In this document: positions 47,388 through 59,623 of the stretch, piece after piece | Position numbering within the stretch: position 1 is the first letter of the stretch | Layout: the number at the start of each line of letters is the position of its first letter | DNA from: Chlorokybus atmophyticus | Taxonomy: Eukaryota; Plantae; Mesostigma and Chlorokybus algae | Reading direction: 5' to 3' | DNA length: 64,000 nucleotides | NCBI GenBank assembly: GCA_009103225.1 | Contig: RHPI01001946.1 | Coordinates: 1-64,000 of the forward strand | Notes under the pieces: model-generated | The model's database searches: none | Seen by the model: only the letters and a program-made list of their open reading frames with translations | What the model was told of the DNA's origin: nothing | Position numbers and translations under genes: made by a program

Positions 47388-50197
<2,810 letters not shown>

Positions 50198-51323
50198 TCT
50201 TCTTGGTTGCTTGCTCATTGACTGTATATCAGCCATGCGCAGTCGTTGAATGTAGAGATATAATCTGTACAGTAGGGTGGTTGGAGTACAGGTTGGTTGC
50301 CAGGACCAGTATGTCATAAGTATCAGCAGCAAGTAGGTGGCAGTTTTTGGCAACCAAAGTGTCTGCGCTATGTGCTGCAGAGCTCTCAACTATGTTAGCA
50401 GTTGTTTGGCTGCGCACGTTTGACTAGCATATTGGTAGCAGCAGCTGTCGTGTAAATGTATGCAACTGCTAAAGCTTAAACTCAGGCGCATCTCGTGCGT
50501 AGATGCAGATTGAGAGCGCAAAGCAACGCGAGTGTGTAAAAGCTCCTGTGTACGAAGTGTGTCTAGCATGTTGCTCGTTAACTAGCATGTTGCTTGGCTG
50601 ACTGTTTATTGATGAAAGCTGATTGGACAGTGTCCTGTCGTACACAGTTGCGTTGCTACATACATCATGTTATGTGCTGAGGCATAACGCCTGGCTTTGG
50701 CATTGGAAGGCTAGTGAATATGCAGCTGCGCGAGCGTACACATTTACACGCTCGTACTTAAACTTATGTACCTAGGTGTACACATTCGTACACACCACGA
50801 AGATATAGACGTAATTGTAGTGCACAGGTACAGTATTGTTGTAGGAACGTACACGACAGTACCAAGGTAGTGTGCAACGGTATTTCACAGGTGATAGGGT
50901 GTTTTTGAGCAGTATCTCGCACTTTTCTAGGGGTAACAGCTATGCATAGTTTTGCAATACATACCTGTCGCCATGTTGATGACAAGATAGATATCTGGAC
51001 TATCATGTGAACTGGCCAGCGTGTGGAAATGTACTTGTGACAGCTTCTGTTAGCATAAAATCACAATCTGCGCAAAGCTTGAGACATGACAGGCGAAACC
51101 CTTCCATGCACTCATTCCGCAAGCAATGCACAACATGTCTGCATACATCACTGTCGTTGATATTGGTTGTAGCACATCACTACTCACAACCTCGTAAAAG
51201 CACTAAAACATCATCCGTAAACTATTCTGTCAGCTCTACACATGAGACAAAAAGCAACAAACCATTTAACGCCTTCTCTCTCGCTGATAGTCCACTATTA
51301 CTGCAAGGCTTACGACAAGCAGC

Positions 51324-52066
51324 CTACTTGGCACCACCGTAGGCGGCGATAGCCTGAGCGAAGGTAATGTCCAAGCCGTTGGGTCCGGACTTGGCCTTCA
51401 TGACGTCAGCTGCGCAGCCTGGGATAAGGGCCACAATCCTGAAGGCCAGCGTATCAACGGCGGCTTCGACTGTGCGCAGGATGGCGGCCACGGGCTGACC
51501 GATGAGAGGGACAGTGCTGAACAGACCAGCTCTGCCAATGAGGACACTGAGAAGGTCCTGGTGCACCTTGATGAACTGGATCGCGGACGTGCACACGACA
51601 CCCTGATCAGCCTTAGGGTAGGCCACAGAGCCAACCAGCCTCTGCGTCATGATAAGACAGTAGTTGAGAGGGTGTATGGGAGAACGTTGGTCAATGGGAT
51701 ACACATGCATGAGAAGATATAAGACAGGACCAGCGGTTATACAAGCACTCACGCACGCATTCTTACCACAGCGAGCTGAGCACCGGTGGTTGCGATCATG
51801 CCGAAGCGGGAGAGGATCTGCACGAAGGGTCCCTGACCGATGAGTAGGAGAGGGCCGTTGAGCACTGTAAGCGTCTTCGCGATGGTGCGGATGCCGATGG
51901 AGTCGCTCGTCAACATGTCAATCAGGTTGGCCAGGTCGATGTTGCTGGGCTGGGTGGTGGGCATCGGGCAGGGTGGGCATGACTGCGCGTTCGCCACTGA
52001 TGCTGCCATGCCAGACAGCAGCAGGCAGCAGAGGGCAGCGCCCAGCATGGCTTGGTTCTGAGCCAT
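51324..52066 (-). CDS. Secreted protein paralogue A (~205 aa), similar to fungal UVI-1-type proteins; 2 coding exons (52066-51767, 51641-51324)
   Basis: Signal peptide MAQNQAMLGAALCCLLLSGMAASVANA, then ...TVLNGPLLLIGQGPFVQIL...GAQLAV|RLVGSVAYP...QFIKVHQDLLSVLIGRAGLFSTVPLIGQPVAAILRTVEAAVDTLAFRIV...AIAAYGGAK*. Canonical GT-AG intron; clear paralogy to 53884-54591. Confidence 0.85.
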
Positions 52067-52351
52067 CGTTCTTGAATTGACTGCAGAGTGTAAGGGTCAG
52101 TTTGGACTGTCGTTGCGACAGTTGACCCAGTATGACGCAATGCGACAGGCAACACTTGGCATGCATCCCATGCGTCAAATGCGCATGTGCAGAATGCAGT
52201 GTCCATCAACCAACGCATAGCCACTGGACACACCAAACAGTGATGCAAGCGAGGGAGTGCAGAGTACCAAAGCACTAGACATACCTGCTTGGAGTTGCGA
52301 ACTTCTTCCGACGACGCTGGTTTCGATCGACAACACCTGCCCTCCGGCCGT

Positions 52352-52465
52352 TCTCTCCCACCTATATATACATATGGTTGTACATGTATGGGGTACACTT
52401 CTGCATGCCCTTCAGCCAGCCTCGCTTCTTCCTACGGAGTGAGGGGGCATCATTGAACTTCCGCC
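52352..52465 (-). promoter_or_regulatory. Core promoter of paralogue A: upstream GGCGGAAGTTCAATGATGCCC motif and TATATATAG box
   Basis: The same two elements occur in the same order upstream of paralogue B, followed in both by a CCAAGCAG|GT 5'UTR splice donor. Confidence 0.6.
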
Positions 52466-53422
52466 CCTCTGGGAAGATAGCAGCACACTTTTTCCCATTG
52501 TTTTGAAAAATAGTCTTGATTCTCTTACGTAATCCTGCGGTGCCGTGTTTGCGGTGGGTGGCCAACCGGGGGCAAAGAGACAAGCAGACACGTGCCTCAA
52601 ACACAGTGCACGCCTAAAGTTGCCAAGTCGTCACGTGCGCGACTTGTGTGGTGACGCCGTCACCTGTTGTCAGGTAGCACGCTGTAGCAGGTCTTGTACC
52701 GAATCAACCCGTACAGGTGTGTCATAAGGCGCGCATTGCTGTTCTGTGAGGAAAATATGGTAACTGACAGTGTCAGTGTCAGTGGAGGCCCCTTGGTCGA
52801 AAGACGCCTTCACCACAAAGGCCACCAATGCCGCCGGCGCGCGGTGCCAGCAAGTTTACCACGCAAGAAGGCGCGCATTATAGAAGCTATTCTCGTATGG
52901 GTAGCCATTCATGTCTGGCTATAGCCAAGATTGCATGACTTGACGGCTTTGCACCTTAGAAGGCGTGGAGCTCTGAGAAGCCGCTGATCAGCCCAACATC
53001 ACTATACTTGGCAATATCTGGTGTCGTGACAGAGAACTTGTGACCATCATGGCACGGTAGATCGCGCCAAAAGCTCTCAAAAGCACATGTGACCTCGTCA
53101 CTTGTGGTCTTTACTCGATATCCCCTAGCACAGATTGCGTCGAACTATAGAAACGGCAAGTACATTGCGCGCTGACTCAAGATGCAATCGACAGTCAGAC
53201 ACAGCCGCGACTGATAGCGGTCTTTGATGGCGCGCGGCGGGCCCGACAGCCTCCGCACCACCAGTTTTTGCTCTTTTCAAAGGGACAATCTGTTCAGCCA
53301 CAGAAGACGGACCAAATCTACCGCAAACGCACGTGACAAGCGCTTCTTGGTGCTTCTTGCGTGCATGCATGCGCGCCCTGCTGGGCAGCCACCAAGGCAG
53401 GAAGGAGGACAAGGGAAGGGGC

Positions 53423-53502
53423 GGCGGAAGTTTAATGATGCCCTCTCTCTGTAGGAGGTGAAGGGTATGGACAAGTATACGTACGCACATGTGTATATAT
53501 AG
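53423..53502 (+). promoter_or_regulatory. Core promoter of paralogue B: GGCGGAAGTTTAATGATGCCC motif and TATATATAG box
   Basis: 21-nt motif at 53423-53443 (one mismatch to the copy at 52445-52465); TATA box at 53494-53502. Confidence 0.6.
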
Positions 53503-53883
53503 TGGCCAGGGTTACCAGTTCTGGCAGGTGTTGCCGAGCTGATTCAAGTGACTCTGAGAAAACCCACTACACCAAGCAGGTGGGCCTCAGTGGCTTGGTA
53601 TGCGCTCCCTCGCTTGCGTCGCTGTTTGGTGTGTCCAATGGCTATGCGTTGGTTGATGGGCACTGCCTGTTTACCATGTGGGGTTTGGTGCATGTGTTGC
53701 AGTTGTGCGTCTTACGCATGTCATGCATGTCGAGTGCTACCTATCGCATTTGAACGCGCATGTCTTGCGGCTGTTGCCTGCGCACTTCTTACCTTGTCAC
53801 ATCCAGCGCCATTGCGTGTACCTAATGTGACCTCACTTTCTTCTATCTGTCTGTGTATCAGTTCTCAAAGAAAGACAGCCAAG

Positions 53884-54591
53884 ATGGCCCGCAAGATGGC
53901 CGTCGCGGTCCTCTGCATGATGCTGTTCGCTGTGGTGTCGGTCGACGCCCAGACATGCAGCTGCACAGGAGCCAACCGCCCCTCTGCGTCCAGCCTGGCC
54001 GCATCCATCAAGACATTGACCGCGCAGTCCCGCGCCATCCGTTCCATCGCTGAAACCATCACCACCATCAACGGCCCCCTGATCATCCTTGGCCAGGGTC
54101 CCTTCCCTGAGATCATCTCACGCTTTGTCACCATCACCACCACCGGCGTCAACGTGGCTGTGGTAAGTGTGGGTGTGTCCAAAGGGTGTATGTGCATCCG
54201 GGTGCATTTGAGTGTTGAAAATTTTACGGTTGCATACTTGGAGACTCTGCAACAAAGCTCACGTTCTTCTTGATTGCAGACCCTCGTGGGCGCTACTGCC
54301 TACCCCGCCGCTAACCAGGGTGTGGTCTGCAACGCCCTGATCGAGTTCATCCATGTACACCAGGCTCTCCTGGGCGTCCTCATCGACAAGGGTGGACTGT
54401 TCTCTGAAGTCCCCTTGATCGGCCAGCCTGTTGCCGCTGTCTTGCAGACCCTTGAGGCCGCTGTGGACACGCTCGCATTCGGCATTGTTGGCACCATCCC
54501 CGGCTGCAGGACGAAGGCCATGAACGCCAACCAGGGCCTCAAGTCGGCCTTTGCCAGCGCTATCCAGACATACCAGGGCCTCAACATTTAA
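53884..54591 (+). CDS. Secreted protein paralogue B (~196 aa), similar to fungal UVI-1-type proteins; 2 coding exons (53884-54162, 54280-54591)
   Basis: Signal peptide MARKMAVAVLCMMLFAVVSVDA, then ...TTINGPLIILGQGPFPEII...GVNVAV|TLVGATAYP...EFIHVHQALLGVLIDKGGLFSEVPLIGQPVAAVLQTLEAAVDTLAFGIV...AIQTYQGLNI*. Intron at the same codon position as in paralogue A. Confidence 0.87.
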
Positions 54592-55306
54592 GCTAAAAAC
54601 TTAGAGAGTTTTTTTGTTTCTGAGCTTAAGTTTCCGGCTGACCTGCAATGGCAGAGTGGAGCTTAGTAGTAAAAGGTGTAGAGTTGGGTTTGTGGACAGT
54701 ATGCTAAATTCAAAATCAAAGTGAATGCTGCCAAGTGACAGTAGCTTTTGCACCTTTTTTGTGGGCTTGGTATTGTCTCACTCCGACGTGACGATAATTC
54801 ATCTACCATGAAAAATACTCTGCGCTACCGTGACCTCTACGTAATGTTGATGTGTTGGAAACTGTGAGTGTCGGCATGCACCAAACAGTTGGCTCTCTGG
54901 TGATGATGAGTATGTAACATTGATGAGTTTAGATTGAGACAACTGACTCATCCTATTGCCAGTACTGTTATTGCCAATAATTACAGTGACAGCATTGTGG
55001 TTAGTCATTGAGTAAGCAGAACAGCATGTCATTCAATTCAGTCCATGCTATTGGCTGTGGTTGTTACTTGGAATGAGCACGTCTATTAGTAAACCTTATC
55101 CAGTGTGACTGAATCCAAAGCCCTTTGACACTTGATCATCAGCCCAACCAGTGGAACATGCACCAATGTCTTTGCCAATGTCTTGATCTTTGAACCAATG
55201 AGACTGTAATTCAATGTTGACGCTGTGACAATTCATACATGGCCATGCTCATACAATGTCCAGTGTAGAGCAGATAATCTCACAAGCAGCAGTGTGCTAC
55301 TTATTC

Positions 55307-58300
55307 TCAATTGCACATCTGCGTCCTGAGCTCATGCAAACACTTGCTCAGCCTATCAAGGAACAATTCCACTTCTTGCTTTGTGGTCCCAATCGCTGCC
55401 GCAGCCGTAAGATACGACACAGGATACCTACCAGTATACAGGCTGATCATAAAACAAGCAACAACAACAATACCAACCACCACTACCGAAAAAACTCAAT
55501 ACACACCTGTCATGTGAAGCACCAAAGCCTTGGAGTTTCATGCCGCAGACGGTTTTGTTCTCACCTTGCGCGATGACACGTGTCCCGGACACATTCCTGT
55601 CCAAGAGAAAACAGGTGAGTCTACCACTCGTCACTCACACAGCATCAAGTACATGTACAGTGATACATCCATCACCGTTACCTTGAGAATAGCATTGATC
55701 CCAGCATTGTCAACGCCTTGGGTGATGAGGGTGCTTCATGTTCTGATGATGAGGAAACACTAGGCGCATTGTTCTCTGCTTGGTTGCTGCCTTCGCAACA
55801 AACATGCAAACGCTCTGTACCAGTCTCTTCGCCTTTGTTGTCATTGGCCTGAACAGAGTGTGCTGTAAGCAAGTGGAGCTGCGCTTGCCAAAGAGCCAAT
55901 GTTCATGCACACTTATGCACACGCGCGCACATACACAGAATGGCGGGTACAAGGTAGATCAGCAACACTCAAGAGAAAGGCCGACCCAACAGCATGCAAG
56001 CAACACACCTTGCCAGTCGCACCACTTGAACAGGTAGTGGTATGTCTCAAGGAGACAGTCATTGCCAGTGAGATTGGGTTGCCGGGTGTTTCCAGCACGC
56101 GCTCACCTGCACGCATGTGCGTTTTGCACATTGCGACTAGTAGTCGCACTGCCAACCTACAACATGGCATGCAACACACGGCTGTGTCGTCTGTGACCAG
56201 TTGTACGAACACAAACATGCACAACGGACAGCAGCTGCTGTTGTTGTTGCAAGCACATTGACTGAAGCAGGTTTGGCAACATGTACACACTGTGACATAC
56301 ACACACGTGCATGCGTGCGCACACATGGGCAAACATTCTGCCACACACGCACGCACACAAACAACGCATTGTCACCATGCACAGGCAAACTAAGCAGGTC
56401 ATGGTTGAAATGAACGAACCATATTGCCGCGCAACCTCACTCATCTTCGTCTTCATGTACACGTAGAGCTCCTCACGCTCTTCAAGCAGCCGCAAAAAGC
56501 CTGACAGACACTTACAAGTTGGTTACACGCTTGACACTGTTAAGCTTCTGCACTGTTGGTTTGCCGATGTTGAGATGAAGCAGGCAAGACAAACTGATGG
56601 CATCTACCCACAATATGACCAAGAATCAGTGTATGCTCATGACATGTTAGCATGCATGATGCAATGCGTGCTAATGGAAGGGGTTGCTGTTGGCGCACGC
56701 TTACCTGTTTTGCCCATTGACAGCAGCGTTATAAAAAGATCCAACAGCGGCGAGCTTGACGCACGGCCTAACAGCAGCATCAACACTGATGCTCAACAAC
56801 TGTGCGCGCACATGTAGTTTGTGCTTCTTGCGCCAACTGTGCGTGTGTGCGTGTACGCGCGCTGCAATAAGTGTGGAAATCTTGCATCATAACAACACCA
56901 CTCTCACCCGGATAAAGCTCATTGACTCGAGGCACAAGCGCGTGGCTTTTCTTCCCCTCAATCACAATCGAACCGCCAACCTGTACCAAACATCAACAGT
57001 CAACATTCCTACCAGCTCGTTACCTATAAGATGCAAAGTATGTACACAAGCAGGACCTTACAGGCACCATGAAGTTCTTGTCCGTGCTTTGAACCACCGC
57101 ATCTACGCGGCCCCGACGCCACGCCGCTGTTATCAACTTGCAAAGCTCCCGGGACTGGCACACAATGGATGTTGAACATGTTATACATGTTATACATTAC
57201 TGCTCGGATGAGTCGTTTGTACAACTGGTTGCAGGGCTGGCTACTTGAATGTGTTGAAGCGCTGGACCATATGAGAGAAGCAGCCACTCGATGAGCACTT
57301 GCTATGTTGTGTGTTATGTTAGTTGCTTAACGGATTGGCTTGTTGATCAAGCCGCACGCAGGTTGCATTGACCAATAACTTGATATTGATGAAGATTGAC
57401 ACACCTGCACGCCATATGCATTGTTGATGACGTGGGCAACTCCTGCCTTGCTGCACAGCTTGGCCACTTCAATCACACTGCAATGGGTAACAGCCGTGAG
57501 CCATACTCATCATTTGCATGAAGTTGATGGTGTGTTGCAACCAGCTGGCATGCATGCGTGCCTGTCGGCAGCGCGCGGAGTGAAGCAACTTGTTGTCGTG
57601 AGCATGCAAAGCACGTTCTCGGCGCCAACACGGGTCAATTCTGCTTCAACCCTGGCCAAGTCAGTGCGGAGCTGGTCGCCCTCGATGATGTTGGGGACCA
57701 CCTGGGCTAAGTGACACATACAATGCGACGAAGAGTGATGAGACAATATTGGGTCTGGATAGTAGATGCTTATGCGCGTAACATACCAGAAGCTCCAAGC
57801 CTGCGGCTGCCACACATTTTATGCAGGTCTTCTGGTCGATGCGCGGCCATAGCACATACCTGCGCAGACCAATATAAGCATGACTAACACACCAGTGCCA
57901 CCGGCATTTGCACTGTGAACACGCAGCAACAATAAACACGTGTACATAAGAGCTCACGTGTAGCACATGCAAGCGTACTTGCCCGTGCACACGCATGCAG
58001 GCAGGACTGTACGCATGAACGCATATACCAACGTGTGCACACGCACTCGCACACACATCCATCTAAGCCATGTACAAAAGTACCTTGGAGCTGGCCGTAG
58101 CTGTTTCAGTGCAAGCAAGCAGAGTGTTATCGCCATGCCGGTTGCCACGGGCAGCACGGTCACGCTGCCAATATCTGTAACGCACATGACAGAGTATGAC
58201 AAATTGTCAATGTTTGCATGGTTTGCTGTTGATATATGATTGTTGTATTACCACCAAAGCCGGCCGTCGTCAAAGCATCTTGCGCCAACAGGTTGCATAG

Positions 58301-59623
58301 CTTGGCCATGAGCGTGGAGCCTGCAGCCTGTGGCATGCATGAACAGCGTCAAAAACTCCTGCAAGTGAGTGTTACCAACAGCTCATGAGCAACACCAACT
58401 GTGCACTTCATCACTGAGACGCTGTGGCATGCATGGAAGCATGTTGGCTCGTTTATACATATATGTGCGTGCGCGCATGCATTTGCCCACGTGCATGTGT
58501 GCGCCCTTACGTGCGTGCCAGCGTGTGTGTGTGTGCACGCGCGTGCACACACACACACACGTGGGCGCATGCGTATGTGCGTATATGCGGATTGTGCGTG
58601 TGTGCATACACATGCTGGCGTGCACGCACGCATGCACATGTGTGCTGTTGCGCACAACATGCATACACACGCATACAGTAGATGGCGTACACCAACACAT
58701 GCTCTAGGTGTATATGCTGTACTTGCCTTTGGCTGGTCCTCTGTGATGTTGCCGGAGCGTCCGATGCCGTGCGCCATGCCATGGTGCCGCCGCAACACCA
58801 GCGCGCTGTACACGCGGGCCTCGCGCTCCCCGACACCCGCGCTGCCAGGAAAGTTGTTGCTGTCCATCGCCGCCAACTCCTGCCGCGCAACAATAACAAC
58901 ATCAACATCAACAAGGCACAAGCGTCAAAGGATGACAACAGCAAAGACAGCAGCAGCAGCATTGCCCCCCCACCCCACCTCACCACCACCACCACCAGCA
59001 CAACAACAACAACAACAACAGCATTGCCTTCCCGGGTTGAGCACATTGTTGTGCTCGCAGTGTGGGTACATTACATTGTGAGTATGAAATACTCAACAGC
59101 ATGCACACTCTCCTACAAGCCACTTGCATTGGCATGTAACAGCATGCACACTCTTTTGGATTAGCTGGCATGAACCAGATTGTACATGCTGTTCTCAACA
59201 GACATATACTCACAAACAGACGGTGCTGACGTTGTGTAACCTGCTCACAACCTGACTACTAGCTTCAATGCCAGCTTGCAAGTAAGCATGTTGTAGGATT
59301 GTGAATGAAAGCTAAGGCAATCTGCGCAGTGGCTGCTTGCCTGCAGGAGAATCTCAATGGTGTGATCGTCCCAGCCAGTCTGGGGCATGCGCCTGTTGGC
59401 CAGCAGAGCTTTCACCTGCACGACGACAACGACAATGAATAACAATAACCTCAATCACGACAACAACGAGGACGACGATGACCACCTTGTTGATCTGCTG
59501 GTGCACCACAGCAGCTTGCACACTCACCAGCGCCCGGCGCTTGCCAAGGCCGGCCGCGGCGCCCTGGCGGATGTACGCGGGGTTCACGAGGCCCTCCGCC
59601 AGCGCCAGGCTAGCCGAGTCCAT
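55307..59623 (-). CDS. SEPSECS: O-phosphoseryl-tRNA(Sec) selenium transferase (selenocysteine synthase), multi-exon
   Basis: Motifs [34 protein letters not shown]|[65 protein letters not shown]|VGGSIV, LYP|[33 protein letters not shown]; stop at 55307. Confidence 0.96.

What the first reader, a model, noticed from the sequence alone, without database searches (positions are those of the whole stretch)
51324..54591. Head-to-head pair of secreted proteins resembling ascomycete UVI-1 proteins: candidate fungus-to-alga gene transfer followed by duplication
Seen in sequence: two ~200-aa paralogues with signal peptides, a Cys-containing N-terminal stub (QSCPPCP / QTCSC), further shared Cys (GVVC, IPGC), an amphipathic helical core and an intron at the same codon. 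Recalled, not searched: the blocks NGPL(L/I)(L/I)xGQGPF and (Q/E)FxxVHQxLLxxLIx(R/K)xGLFxxVPLIGQPVAAxLxxxEAxVDTLAF closely match secreted proteins annotated 'UVI-1' (near-UV-induced, Bipolaris oryzae) in filamentous ascomycetes, and I know no land-plant members. Inference: an acquired fungal surface or stress protein, fully domesticated (TATA promoter, host-type introns, C-ending codons) and duplicated as an inverted, co-regulated module, possibly for terrestrial, UV, desiccation or fungal-interaction biology. All neighbouring genes are ordinary housekeeping genes, so the scaffold is not a fungal contaminant.
Basis: partly seen in the sequence, partly recalled or inferred. Interest (0 to 1): 0.82.

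Follow-up and report, generated by a model that had tools for sequence, protein, structure and literature searches.

The report
Fungal-type UVI-1 gene pair, Chlorokybus
The early-branching land-plant relative Chlorokybus carries two expressed, back-to-back genes for secreted proteins of a family that is otherwise almost entirely fungal (UVI-1 / Pfam PF17615, a lipid-binding helical bundle), most likely captured from an ascomycete fungus. Liverworts and mosses also have the family, apparently from a separate capture.

Summary
Two divergent genes (A, minus strand, 205 aa; B, plus strand, 196 aa) each have a 5'UTR intron and one phase-0 coding intron at the same codon. Transcript contigs from two studies match the window 100% and confirm every splice joint.

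All four coding exons match Pfam PF17615 (C166), the family of Bipolaris oryzae UVI-1 (44-56% identity to the founder protein). They carry the UVI-1 signature NGPLxxxGQGPF. A high-confidence model of UVI-1, built with a family alignment that includes the algal exons, superposes on the fatty-acid-binding domains of Mp1p and AfMP4p.

A scan of 1.84 billion proteins found 352 relatives. All named ones are Dikarya fungi except Chlorokybus and Marchantia, and a paper reports PF17615 in a secreted Physcomitrella protein.

Separate trees for each exon both place Chlorokybus inside a Pezizomycotina group, next to Lasallia, Thelocarpon and UVI-1. Marchantia groups with Morchella among polypores. AU tests reject one green clade only weakly (p 0.03-0.05).

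Fungal intron positions are not shared, and the SepSecS neighbour rules out a fungal contaminant. This is a sound new example of a known kind of event. The scan's first readers noted further copies elsewhere in this genome. Joined-exon analyses were left out.

The parts
52285..52359 (-). Gene A, 5'UTR exon (the transcript contig ends at 52359; the true start is not determined)
   Evidence: X1 contig record 1, 100% identical
52081..52284 (-). Gene A, 5'UTR intron (204 nt, GT..AG on the minus strand); holds the conserved block 52196-52261
   Evidence: Joint 52080/52285 in X1; inverted repeat I1
51767..52080 (-). Gene A, exon 2: 14 nt of 5'UTR plus CDS 52066..51767 (100 aa: signal peptide, QSCPPCP stub, helices with NGPLLLIGQGPF)
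   Evidence: PF17615 E 5.6e-5
51642..51766 (-). Gene A, coding intron (125 nt, phase 0)
   Evidence: Joint 51641/51767 in X1 and X2
51200..51641 (-). Gene A, last exon: CDS 51641..51324 (105 aa plus stop) and 3'UTR. The contig runs about 61 nt past 51200, the end of the stretch that was laid
   Evidence: PF17615 E 1.4e-14
53508..53579 (+). Gene B, 5'UTR exon (an X2 contig reaches back to 53431)
53580..53861 (+). Gene B, 5'UTR intron (282 nt, GT..AG); holds the conserved block 53601-53666
   Evidence: Joint in X1 and X2; inverted repeat I1
53862..54162 (+). Gene B, exon 2: 22 nt of 5'UTR plus CDS 53884..54162 (93 aa: signal peptide, QTCSC stub, NGPLIILGQGPF)
   Evidence: PF17615 E 5.3e-10
54163..54279 (+). 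Gene B, coding intron (117 nt, GTAAGT..CAG, phase 0, same codon as in gene A)
   Evidence: Joint in X1 and X2
54280..54752 (+). Gene B, last exon: CDS 54280..54591 (103 aa plus stop) and 3'UTR to about 54752
   Evidence: PF17615 E 5.5e-11
52362..52465 (.). Gene A promoter-proximal blocks mirrored at gene B: a TATATATAG-like motif (52362-52388) and a GGCGGAAGTTnAATGATGCCC block (52438-52465)
   Evidence: Inverted repeats I2 and I3; alignment A4
53423..53502 (.). Gene B promoter-proximal blocks, the partners of the above (53423-53450 and 53476-53502)

Best explanation
These are two old paralogues of a small Chlorokybus gene family. Each encodes a secreted, disulfide-stabilised five-helix bundle of the fungal UVI-1 / PF17615 family, a sister family of HsbA and of the Mp1p fatty-acid-binding domains.

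The family most likely entered the Chlorokybus lineage by horizontal transfer from a Pezizomycotina ascomycete of the UVI-1 / Lasallia / Thelocarpon type. The donor's introns did not come with it. The gene then gained a 5'UTR intron and one coding intron and took on host codon usage. It was duplicated as an inverted, head-to-head unit whose promoter-proximal blocks and a 66-nt 5'UTR-intron block stay conserved.

Inferred mechanism, not shown: after signal-peptide cleavage the protein sits in the wall or mucilage. There it holds a fatty acid or other lipid in the core of the bundle, or coats hydrophobic surfaces, as Mp1p, AfMP4p and HsbA do in fungi.

The bryophyte members (Marchantia, Physcomitrella) probably come from a different fungal donor.
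For: - Real, expressed, spliced genes: transcript contigs 100% identical to the window in two studies.
- Family membership: PF17615 hits on all four exons. Identity to B. oryzae UVI-1 is 44-56%. The UVI-1-type motif N(G/A)PLxxxGQGP, with its 4-residue-longer loop, is shared only with the UVI-1 / Thelocarpon / Lasallia-type sequences.
- Fold: the UVI-1 model has pLDDT 92. It matches Mp1p LBD1/2 and AfMP4p bound to arachidonic or palmitic acid, with TM 0.65-0.75 by query and 0.78-0.90 by target.
- Disulfide: the two Cys columns co-occur (29 sequences with both, 69 with neither, 2 with one).
- Distribution: 352 relatives among 1.84 billion cluster representatives, and only two reach E <= 1e-30: a Chlorokybus protein and a five-domain Marchantia protein whose score is summed over its five domains. 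All other named relatives are Ascomycota or Basidiomycota.
- Trees: the exon-2 and exon-1 rows, analysed separately, land in the same place. They sit inside an Ascomycota + Chlorokybus group (95/86* with exon 2; 98/93* for the narrower 23-row group with exon 1), and with exon 1 they are sister to Lasallia (95/81*). Marchantia groups with Morchella at 100/99*, among Polyporales.
- AU tests: one green clade gives p 0.032 and 0.050. Ascomycetes as one clade without Chlorokybus gives p 0.021 with exon 1.
- Not a contaminant: the intron positions differ from the two conserved fungal ones; GC3 is 0.71-0.83 with C-ending bias; SepSecS and biotin carboxylase genes flank the pair.
Against: - Each tree rests on only about 60 or 100 algal residues.
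- AU tests do not reject {Chlorokybus + Marchantia + Morchella} as one clade (p 0.058 and 0.12).
- With exon 2, AU does not reject ascomycetes forming a clade without Chlorokybus (p 0.16).
- The family tree is unrooted.
- Chlorokybus keeps the Cys pair that the UVI-1 clade proper lacks, so it is not nested deep inside that clade.
- The fold was predicted for the fungal founder protein, not for the joined algal protein.
- Secretion, lipid binding and any physiological role are untested.
Confidence: 0.7

Rival explanations
1. There was one ancient acquisition, or ancient vertical presence, in the streptophyte ancestor. It is shared by Chlorokybus and bryophytes and was lost in most other lineages. 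The Morchella gene is a later plant-to-fungus transfer.
For: The family is present in Chlorokybus, Marchantia and Physcomitrella. AU does not reject {Chlorokybus + Marchantia + Morchella} as one clade (p 0.058 and 0.12).
Against: Both exon trees separate the two green groups by several starred branches. A strictly green clade is rejected at p 0.032 and 0.050. Chlorokybus shares the NGPLxxxGQGP loop with the UVI-1-type ascomycete proteins, while Marchantia shares the short loop with Morchella and basidiomycetes. Exon 1 of A and B gives no BLAST hit to the Marchantia protein. Many independent losses would be needed.
Confidence: 0.17
2. This is an ancient eukaryotic family inherited vertically by both fungi and green plants, with the tree root on the Chlorokybus branch.
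For: The tree is unrooted. Chlorokybus retains the probably ancestral Cys pair.
Against: Named relatives are restricted to Dikarya plus three streptophyte genera among 1.84 billion representatives. The exon-1 AU test rejects placing Chlorokybus outside the ascomycete group (p 0.021). The UVI-1-specific motif is shared.
Confidence: 0.05
3. The genes come from fungal contamination or a chimeric assembly and are not algal.
For: The best per-domain matches are fungal.
Against: The genes lack both conserved fungal introns and have their own introns. Their codon bias resembles that of neighbouring genes. SepSecS, which Dikarya lack (established knowledge), lies 1-4 kb away on the same contig. Identical transcripts occur in runs of organism A from 2013 and 2021. 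A paralogue is in the published Chlorokybus protein set (P0002).
Confidence: 0.02

Closest known systems
UVI-1 of Bipolaris oryzae (Q9P338; P0227) and its Pezizomycotina orthologues ('UVI-1', 'UVI-1h')
   Same: Same Pfam family (PF17615). About 185-205 aa with a signal peptide. Identity of 44-56% over both halves. Shared NGPLxxxGQGPF and FxxVHQxLLxxLIGKxGLFxxVPxIGQPVAAxL...VDTxAF blocks.
   Different: The algal proteins keep a Cys pair that the UVI-1 clade lacks, and they add a CxxC or CxC stub after the signal peptide. They have no introns at the two conserved fungal positions and instead carry their own 5'UTR and coding introns. Near-UV induction, which I recall from the original UVI-1 work and did not find in the searchable library, is untested in the alga.
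Mp1p ligand-binding domains (Talaromyces marneffei; 5ecf, 5csd, 5fb7, 6j6f) and AfMP4p (Aspergillus fumigatus; 5j5k, 5j5l)
   Same: Five-helix bundle fold. TM is 0.65-0.75 by query and 0.78-0.90 by target, with rmsd about 2 A, for the UVI-1 model. Both are secreted or cell-wall proteins.
   Different: Sequence identity is only 12-15%, and a profile search of PDB sequences finds nothing. Fatty-acid binding has not been shown for any PF17615 protein in anything I could read.
HsbA, hydrophobic surface binding protein A (PF12296)
   Same: Related family. Fungal and Marchantia-type PF17615 proteins give sub-threshold HsbA hits (22-33 bits against a cut-off of 33.5). The language-model search puts A exon 2 next to HsbA clusters (0.93). 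The family is described as interface-associated factors for adhesion, enzyme recruitment and surface interactions (PMC13537970, abstract).
   Different: The window's exons give no HsbA hit at E <= 1. Membership is in PF17615, not PF12296.
PF17615 proteins of bryophytes (Marchantia Mp_4g06545/06550, Mp_5g00760, OAE24857; a secreted, Hyp-bearing Physcomitrella protein)
   Same: Same Pfam family in the green lineage, and also secreted.
   Different: They are often tandem multi-domain proteins (up to 5 domains, 899 aa). They have the short loop and no Cys pair. Their closest relative is Morchella importuna (100/99*), within a polypore group, not Chlorokybus.
Documented fungus-to-early-plant gene transfers (e.g. 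the macro2 domain gene of bryophytes, PMC7181705)
   Same: Same kind of event: a fungal gene fixed and domesticated in an early-diverging streptophyte.
   Different: The recipient here is a streptophyte alga of the earliest-branching class. The donor type is Pezizomycotina, not Mucoromycota.

Membership tests
Pfam PF17615 (C166 / UVI-1 family) | Match to the family HMM above the gathering score (36.7 bits) | tested here: met
   B exon 1 scores 40.3, B exon 2 43.5 and A exon 2 55.2 bits. A exon 1 scores 23.9 bits on its own (E 5.6e-5). The exons cover profile positions 11-90 and 106-170 of 171.
Pfam PF17615 (C166 / UVI-1 family) | UVI-1-type signature N(G/A)PLxxxGQGP with the longer helix 1-2 loop | tested here: met
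   A has LNGPLLLIGQGPQ and B has INGPLIILGQGPE. The feature is shared with UVI-1-clade rows and absent from the Beauveria-type, basidiomycete, Morchella and Marchantia rows.
Pfam PF17615 (C166 / UVI-1 family) | Secreted: N-terminal signal peptide, no membrane anchor | tested here: inconclusive
   The sequences show n-, h- and c-regions ending in VDA|Q (B) and ANA|Q (A), with no hydrophobic C-terminus. No signal-peptide predictor or proteomics data were available.
Pfam PF17615 (C166 / UVI-1 family) | Five-helix bundle fold | tested here: inconclusive
The fold was shown for the founder UVI-1 (pLDDT 92) using an alignment that includes the algal exons.
UVI-1 (functional definition) | Transcription induced by near-UV light | not testable with these tools
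   Only assembled contigs of RNA runs were available. They show presence and splicing, not induction.
HsbA (PF12296) | Match to the HsbA HMM above the gathering score (33.5 bits) | tested here: not met
   None of the four exons gives an HsbA hit at E <= 1. Fungal relatives reach only 22-33 bits.
Mp1p-LBD / AfMP4p lipid-binding bundles | Structural superposition on the solved ligand-binding domains | tested here: met
   Foldseek probability 1.00, TM 0.65-0.75 by query and 0.78-0.90 by target, rmsd 1.9-4.4 A, for the family's founder model.
Mp1p-LBD / AfMP4p lipid-binding bundles | Binds fatty acids in the bundle core | not testable with these tools
   This needs a recombinant protein and a binding assay or a co-crystal structure.
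Horizontally transferred gene (fungus to alga) | Recipient sequences nested within donor-group diversity, with statistical support | tested here: inconclusive
   ML placement inside Ascomycota comes from both exons separately (95/86* and 98/93*). AU for ascomycetes as one clade without Chlorokybus gives p 0.021 with exon 1 but 0.16 with exon 2.
Horizontally transferred gene (fungus to alga) | Patchy distribution in the recipient's wider group | tested here: inconclusive
   Named green hits come only from Chlorokybus and Marchantia (plus Physcomitrella from a paper). No other hit scores at the level of the Chlorokybus sequences themselves. Most of the 352 hits are unnamed, however.
Horizontally transferred gene (fungus to alga) | Physically integrated in the host genome, not contamination | tested here: met
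   The pair lies on the same contig as SepSecS and biotin carboxylase. It has host-type introns and codon bias, and identical transcripts occur in two studies.

The most novel reading that the evidence does not exclude
The same fungal secreted lipid-binding bundle family was captured at least twice, independently, by early-diverging streptophytes. Chlorokybus took it from a Pezizomycotina donor whose nearest named relatives today are lichen-forming fungi (Lasallia, Thelocarpon). Liverworts took it from a Morchella- or polypore-like donor. In both lineages it was then kept, amplified and strongly expressed. That would point to a recurrent adaptive value of this protein for life on exposed land surfaces. 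It would also point to intimate fungus-streptophyte-alga contact, for which a 2025 study says no complex symbiosis has been reported among modern organisms (PMC12592215).
Probability: 0.35. Interest if true: 0.7.

Novelty: new member of a known kind. Interest (0 to 1): 0.5.

Why it matters
Chlorokybus belongs to one of the earliest-branching streptophyte lineages and lives on land surfaces. A domesticated, expressed, multi-copy fungal surface-protein family in its genome is concrete evidence of past physical association between ascomycetes and a streptophyte alga. It also adds a datable fungus-to-plant transfer.

A second, apparently independent acquisition of the same family by liverworts would make the family a candidate recurrent tool for terrestrial life, for example in surface hydrophobicity or lipid handling in the wall. 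It would also give an experimentally tractable entry point, because Marchantia and Physcomitrella can be transformed. It further gives the uncharacterised Pfam family PF17615 a fold and a testable ligand hypothesis.

On the other side, fungus-to-early-plant transfers are already a known class of event, and the statistical support here is moderate. This is a good example rather than a surprise.

Tried and rejected
- Word-index protein search with the stop-free ORF that holds A exon 2: no hit. This is uninformative, because even the Chlorokybus paralogue P0002 was missed.
- Paper searches for UVI-1 with Bipolaris, with near-UV, and with horizontal gene transfer: nothing usable.
- Paper searches for HsbA or PF12296 together with bryophytes, Chlorokybus or HGT: only fungal papers. 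I found no prior report of this transfer, but large HGT catalogues and their supplements were not searchable.
- Profile search of PDB sequences: only coiled-coil noise. The relation to Mp1p is visible only by fold.
- Context of the Marchantia-type metagenome protein P0174: no informative neighbours. The origin of the P0085 / P0003-type metagenome sequences, plant or fungus, stays open, and they were left out of the labelled trees.
- Rfam scan and single-strand folding of the conserved 5'UTR-intron block: no family match, z-scores -0.7 and +0.9. A structured RNA is not supported.
- The TATA motif as a proven promoter: rejected as unproven, because transcript contigs abut or overrun the motif.
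- Rows left out of the labelled trees: all unnamed hits, and the Marchantia P0014 / P0001 partial domains with an HMM span under 90 positions.
Full report
**What is there.** Reading the region gives two divergently oriented genes.

- Gene A lies on the minus strand. Its CDS is 52066..51767 (100 aa) and 51641..51324 (105 aa plus stop).
- Gene B lies on the plus strand. Its CDS is 53884..54162 (93 aa) and 54280..54591 (103 aa plus stop).
- In both genes the coding intron is phase 0 and falls at the same aligned codon, after ...AV and before (R/T)LVG (alignments A1 and A2).
- A and B are 63% identical in exon 2 and 45% in exon 1.
- Both begin with a typical signal-peptide-like segment ending ANA|Q (A) or VDA|Q (B), followed by a small Cys stub (QSCPPCP in A, QTCSC in B). 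Neither has a hydrophobic C-terminus.

**Expression and gene models.** One search for public runs found two probably-RNA data sets of one organism (coded A; 2013 and 2021) that hold 43% of the sampled words, roughly the transcribed part. Laying their contigs on 51200-54800 gave an 892-nt and an 846-nt transcript contig with no differing letter. The joints are:

| Gene | Intron | Positions | Length |
|---|---|---|---|
| A | coding | 51642-51766 | 125 nt |
| A | 5'UTR | 52081-52284 | 204 nt |
| B | 5'UTR | 53580-53861 | 282 nt |
| B | coding | 54163-54279 | 117 nt |

All have GT..AG ends on the coding strand. Both genes are therefore expressed and spliced as modelled, and each also has a 5'UTR intron. 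Contigs cannot give true transcript ends. They reach to within 3-6 nt of the TATATATAG-like motif, and one X2 contig extends 64 nt upstream of it at gene B. The 'TATA promoter' is therefore unproven.

**Family.** All four exon translations hit Pfam PF17615 (C166, 'family of unknown function'). Exon 1 covers the first half of the profile and exon 2 the second half.

- The word-index search with the stop-free ORF that holds A exon 2 was blank.
- I therefore ran the exhaustive HMMER scan with the A+B exon-2 profile. It found 352 proteins at E <= 1e-3 among 1.84 billion representatives, and only two at E <= 1e-30.
- Names:
  - P0002 is a Chlorokybus atmophyticus protein (JGI Chlat1 8772). It is 84-87% identical to gene B and mis-modelled, lacking the NGPL..GQGPF segment.
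  - P0001 is a Marchantia polymorpha protein of 899 aa with five tandem domains, whose high score is the sum of the five.
  - The next hits are Ascomycota (Pestalotiopsis, Trichothecium, Beauveria, Thelocarpon, Lasallia, Lophiotrema) and Basidiomycota (Trametes, Cubamyces, Exidia, Psilocybe, Mycena, Pholiota).
- Together with earlier notes of this scan, P0002 identifies the window's genome as Chlorokybus.
- Searching with the best two-sided fungal-type match, P0006, returned 157 proteins. All the named ones are Pezizomycotina and many are called UVI-1 or UVI-1h. They include the founder, Q9P338 of Bipolaris oryzae (P0227).
- Direct comparison with the founder gives B exon 1 50% over 58 aa, B exon 2 44% over 91 aa, A exon 1 48% over 46 aa and A exon 2 56% over 72 aa.

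**Land plants do have the family.**

- A search with a Marchantia-type protein found Mp_4g06550 and Mp_5g00760 on contigs of about 27 Mb, besides MPTK1_4g06545 and OAE24857.
- A preprint on Physcomitrella prolyl hydroxylation lists a secreted protein with validated hydroxyproline whose only domain is PF17615 (10.1101/2024.03.26.586753, Suppl. Fig. S12f).
- The statement 'no land-plant members' is therefore wrong.

**Phylogeny.** I built a full-length backbone of named sequences (49 rows, 165 HMM match columns; LG+C20+F+G4 PMSF; ultrafast bootstrap / SH-aLRT). I then added either the exon-2 rows or the exon-1 rows of A, B and P0002.

- With exon 2:
  - The Chlorokybus trio is one clade (100/99*).
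  - It lies inside a 25-row Ascomycota + Chlorokybus group (95/86*).
  - It sits beside Lasallia, Thelocarpon, Lophiotrema and the UVI-1 clade (99/97*).
- With exon 1:
  - The trio lands in the same place, inside a 23-row ascomycete group (98/93*).
  - It is sister to the lichen fungus Lasallia pustulata (95/81*).
- In both trees Marchantia forms a clade with Morchella importuna 'UVI-1 protein' (100/99*), nested among Polyporales.

AU tests:

| Constraint | Exon-2 set | Exon-1 set |
|---|---|---|
| All green rows one clade | p 0.032 | p 0.050 |
| Green rows plus Morchella one clade | p 0.058 | p 0.12 |
| The 22 ascomycete rows one clade without Chlorokybus | p 0.16 | p 0.021 |

Two independent parts of the protein thus agree on an ascomycete affinity, away from the bryophyte sequences, but the tests are only moderately strong.

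**Rare characters.**

- The loop N(G/A)PLxxxGQGP, four residues longer than in the other subfamilies, is shared by Chlorokybus and the UVI-1 / Thelocarpon / Lasallia-type sequences. It is absent from the Beauveria-type, basidiomycete, Morchella and Marchantia sequences.
- The two cysteines (GVVC and IPGC) co-occur across the family: 29 sequences have both, 69 have neither and 2 have one. This argues for a disulfide.
- Chlorokybus has this pair while the UVI-1 clade proper does not. The algal branch therefore left before that loss and is not nested deep within UVI-1 proper.

**Not a contaminant, and domesticated.**

- In Bipolaris oryzae and Lasallia pustulata the gene has conserved introns just before FVxVHQ and after VVD|TIA. 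Lasallia has a third after GFGPIP.
- The Chlorokybus genes have no intron at these positions. Their single coding intron lies 21 codons upstream of FI(H/K)VHQ. The donor's introns were therefore not inherited. The shared A/B intron arose in the alga before the duplication.
- GC3 is 0.71-0.83 with a C-ending bias, at or above that of neighbouring gene pieces (0.61-0.70). The introns are 45-53% GC.
- SepSecS exons lie on the minus strand at about 57.5-58.9 kb, and biotin carboxylase lies at 41-44 kb. Dikarya lack the selenocysteine machinery (established knowledge), so the contig is not fungal.

**Fold and likely mechanism.**

- AlphaFold2 of B. oryzae UVI-1, with a 74-row family alignment that includes the four algal exon pieces, gave pLDDT 92 and pTM 0.85, with five long helices.
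- Foldseek against the PDB returned as top hits the ligand-binding domains 1 and 2 of Talaromyces marneffei Mp1p with arachidonic or palmitic acid, Aspergillus fumigatus AfMP4p with the same lipids, and the Drechmeria virulence factor g7941. TM was 0.64-0.75 by query and 0.74-0.90 by target.
- Fungal and Marchantia-type PF17615 members give sub-threshold HsbA (PF12296) hits. The language-model search puts A exon 2 next to HsbA clusters.
- I therefore commit to a secreted, disulfide-braced helical bundle that sequesters a lipid or coats hydrophobic surfaces in the wall or mucilage.
- Shown: the family, the fold of the founder, and expression. Inferred: secretion, the ligand and the physiological role. 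Near-UV induction is my recollection of the original UVI-1 work and could not be checked.

**The duplication unit.**

- The two ATG codons are 1818 bp apart.
- Aligning the reverse complement of A's upstream region with B's, together with the repeat search, shows mirrored blocks:
  - GGCGGAAGTTnAATGATGCCC (28 nt, 89%);
  - the TATATATAG motif;
  - GGCAGGTGTTGnCGA;
  - the 5'UTR donor site;
  - a 66-nt block inside the 5'UTR intron that is 92% identical (61/66), although the coding exons are only 65-66% identical at the DNA level.
- That block has no Rfam match and no folding signal. It looks like a DNA-level regulatory element or a gene-conversion tract. It is the subject of another note of this scan.

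**Prior knowledge.** I found no paper that reports this family as a transfer into Chlorokybus or bryophytes. The HGT catalogues' supplements were not searchable, so this is not proof of novelty. First-reader notes of this scan record a second divergent pair 28.6 kb beyond the window's end and a single copy on another piece of the genome. I could not read those sequences.

The evidence above comes from exon-wise analyses and from database proteins.

**Verdict.**

- It is a new member of a known kind of event.
- Interest is 0.5.

Noticed in passing
window 52196-52261 and 53601-53666: A 66-nt block inside the 5'UTR introns of both genes is 92% identical (61/66), while the coding exons are only 65-66% identical in DNA. 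It has no Rfam match and no folding signal (z -0.7 and +0.9). It is probably a DNA-level regulatory element or a gene-conversion tract.
   Followed up: partly
window 52438-52465 and 53423-53450: A mirrored promoter-proximal block, GGCGGAAGTT(C/T)AATGATGCCC (28 nt, 89%), lies upstream of the TATATATAG-like motif of both genes. It is a candidate shared transcription-factor site.
   Followed up: no
P0001, P0014, P0178, P0186 (Marchantia polymorpha) and P0189 (Morchella importuna): Marchantia has several PF17615 genes, one with five near-identical tandem domains (899 aa). Their closest named relative is the Morchella importuna 'UVI-1 protein' (100/99* in both trees), nested among Polyporales sequences. 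This is a separate candidate fungus-liverwort transfer, direction open.
   Followed up: partly
P0243 (record named UVI-1 [Zoysia japonica]): A UVI-1 protein filed under a grass is 65% identical to P0006, an identity in the range shown by the Colletotrichum and other Pezizomycotina proteins listed beside it. It is probably a fungal sequence from infected or colonised plant material.
   Followed up: no
window about 57500-58900, minus strand: SepSecS (O-phosphoseryl-tRNA(Sec) selenium transferase) exons lie next to gene B, so this alga has the selenocysteine machinery.
   Followed up: partly
window 48100-49650: Long overlapping ORFs on both strands give only low-complexity, proline-rich or repeat-type Pfam hits (PARP, TonB_N, keratin head). 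GC skew here is strongly negative (-0.33). This may be a repetitive or proline-rich gene.
   Followed up: no
window 52069-52285 (run X2): One X2 contig joins the 5'UTR exon to 52069 through 11 letters that differ from the window, instead of using the 52080 acceptor. It could be an alternative acceptor, an allele or a paralogue's transcript.
   Followed up: no
P0002 (Chlorokybus atmophyticus, JGI Chlat1 8772): The published model of this paralogue (84-87% identical to gene B) lacks the roughly 31 residues that hold NGPL..GQGPF. It is probably a mis-called exon boundary.
   Followed up: partly
L001 7851-8893 (JGI metagenome contig 3300047327): Marchantia-type PF17615 genes occur in tandem on a 25.8-kb metagenome contig with no other recognisable genes. 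The source organism, bryophyte or fungus, is unknown.
   Followed up: partly
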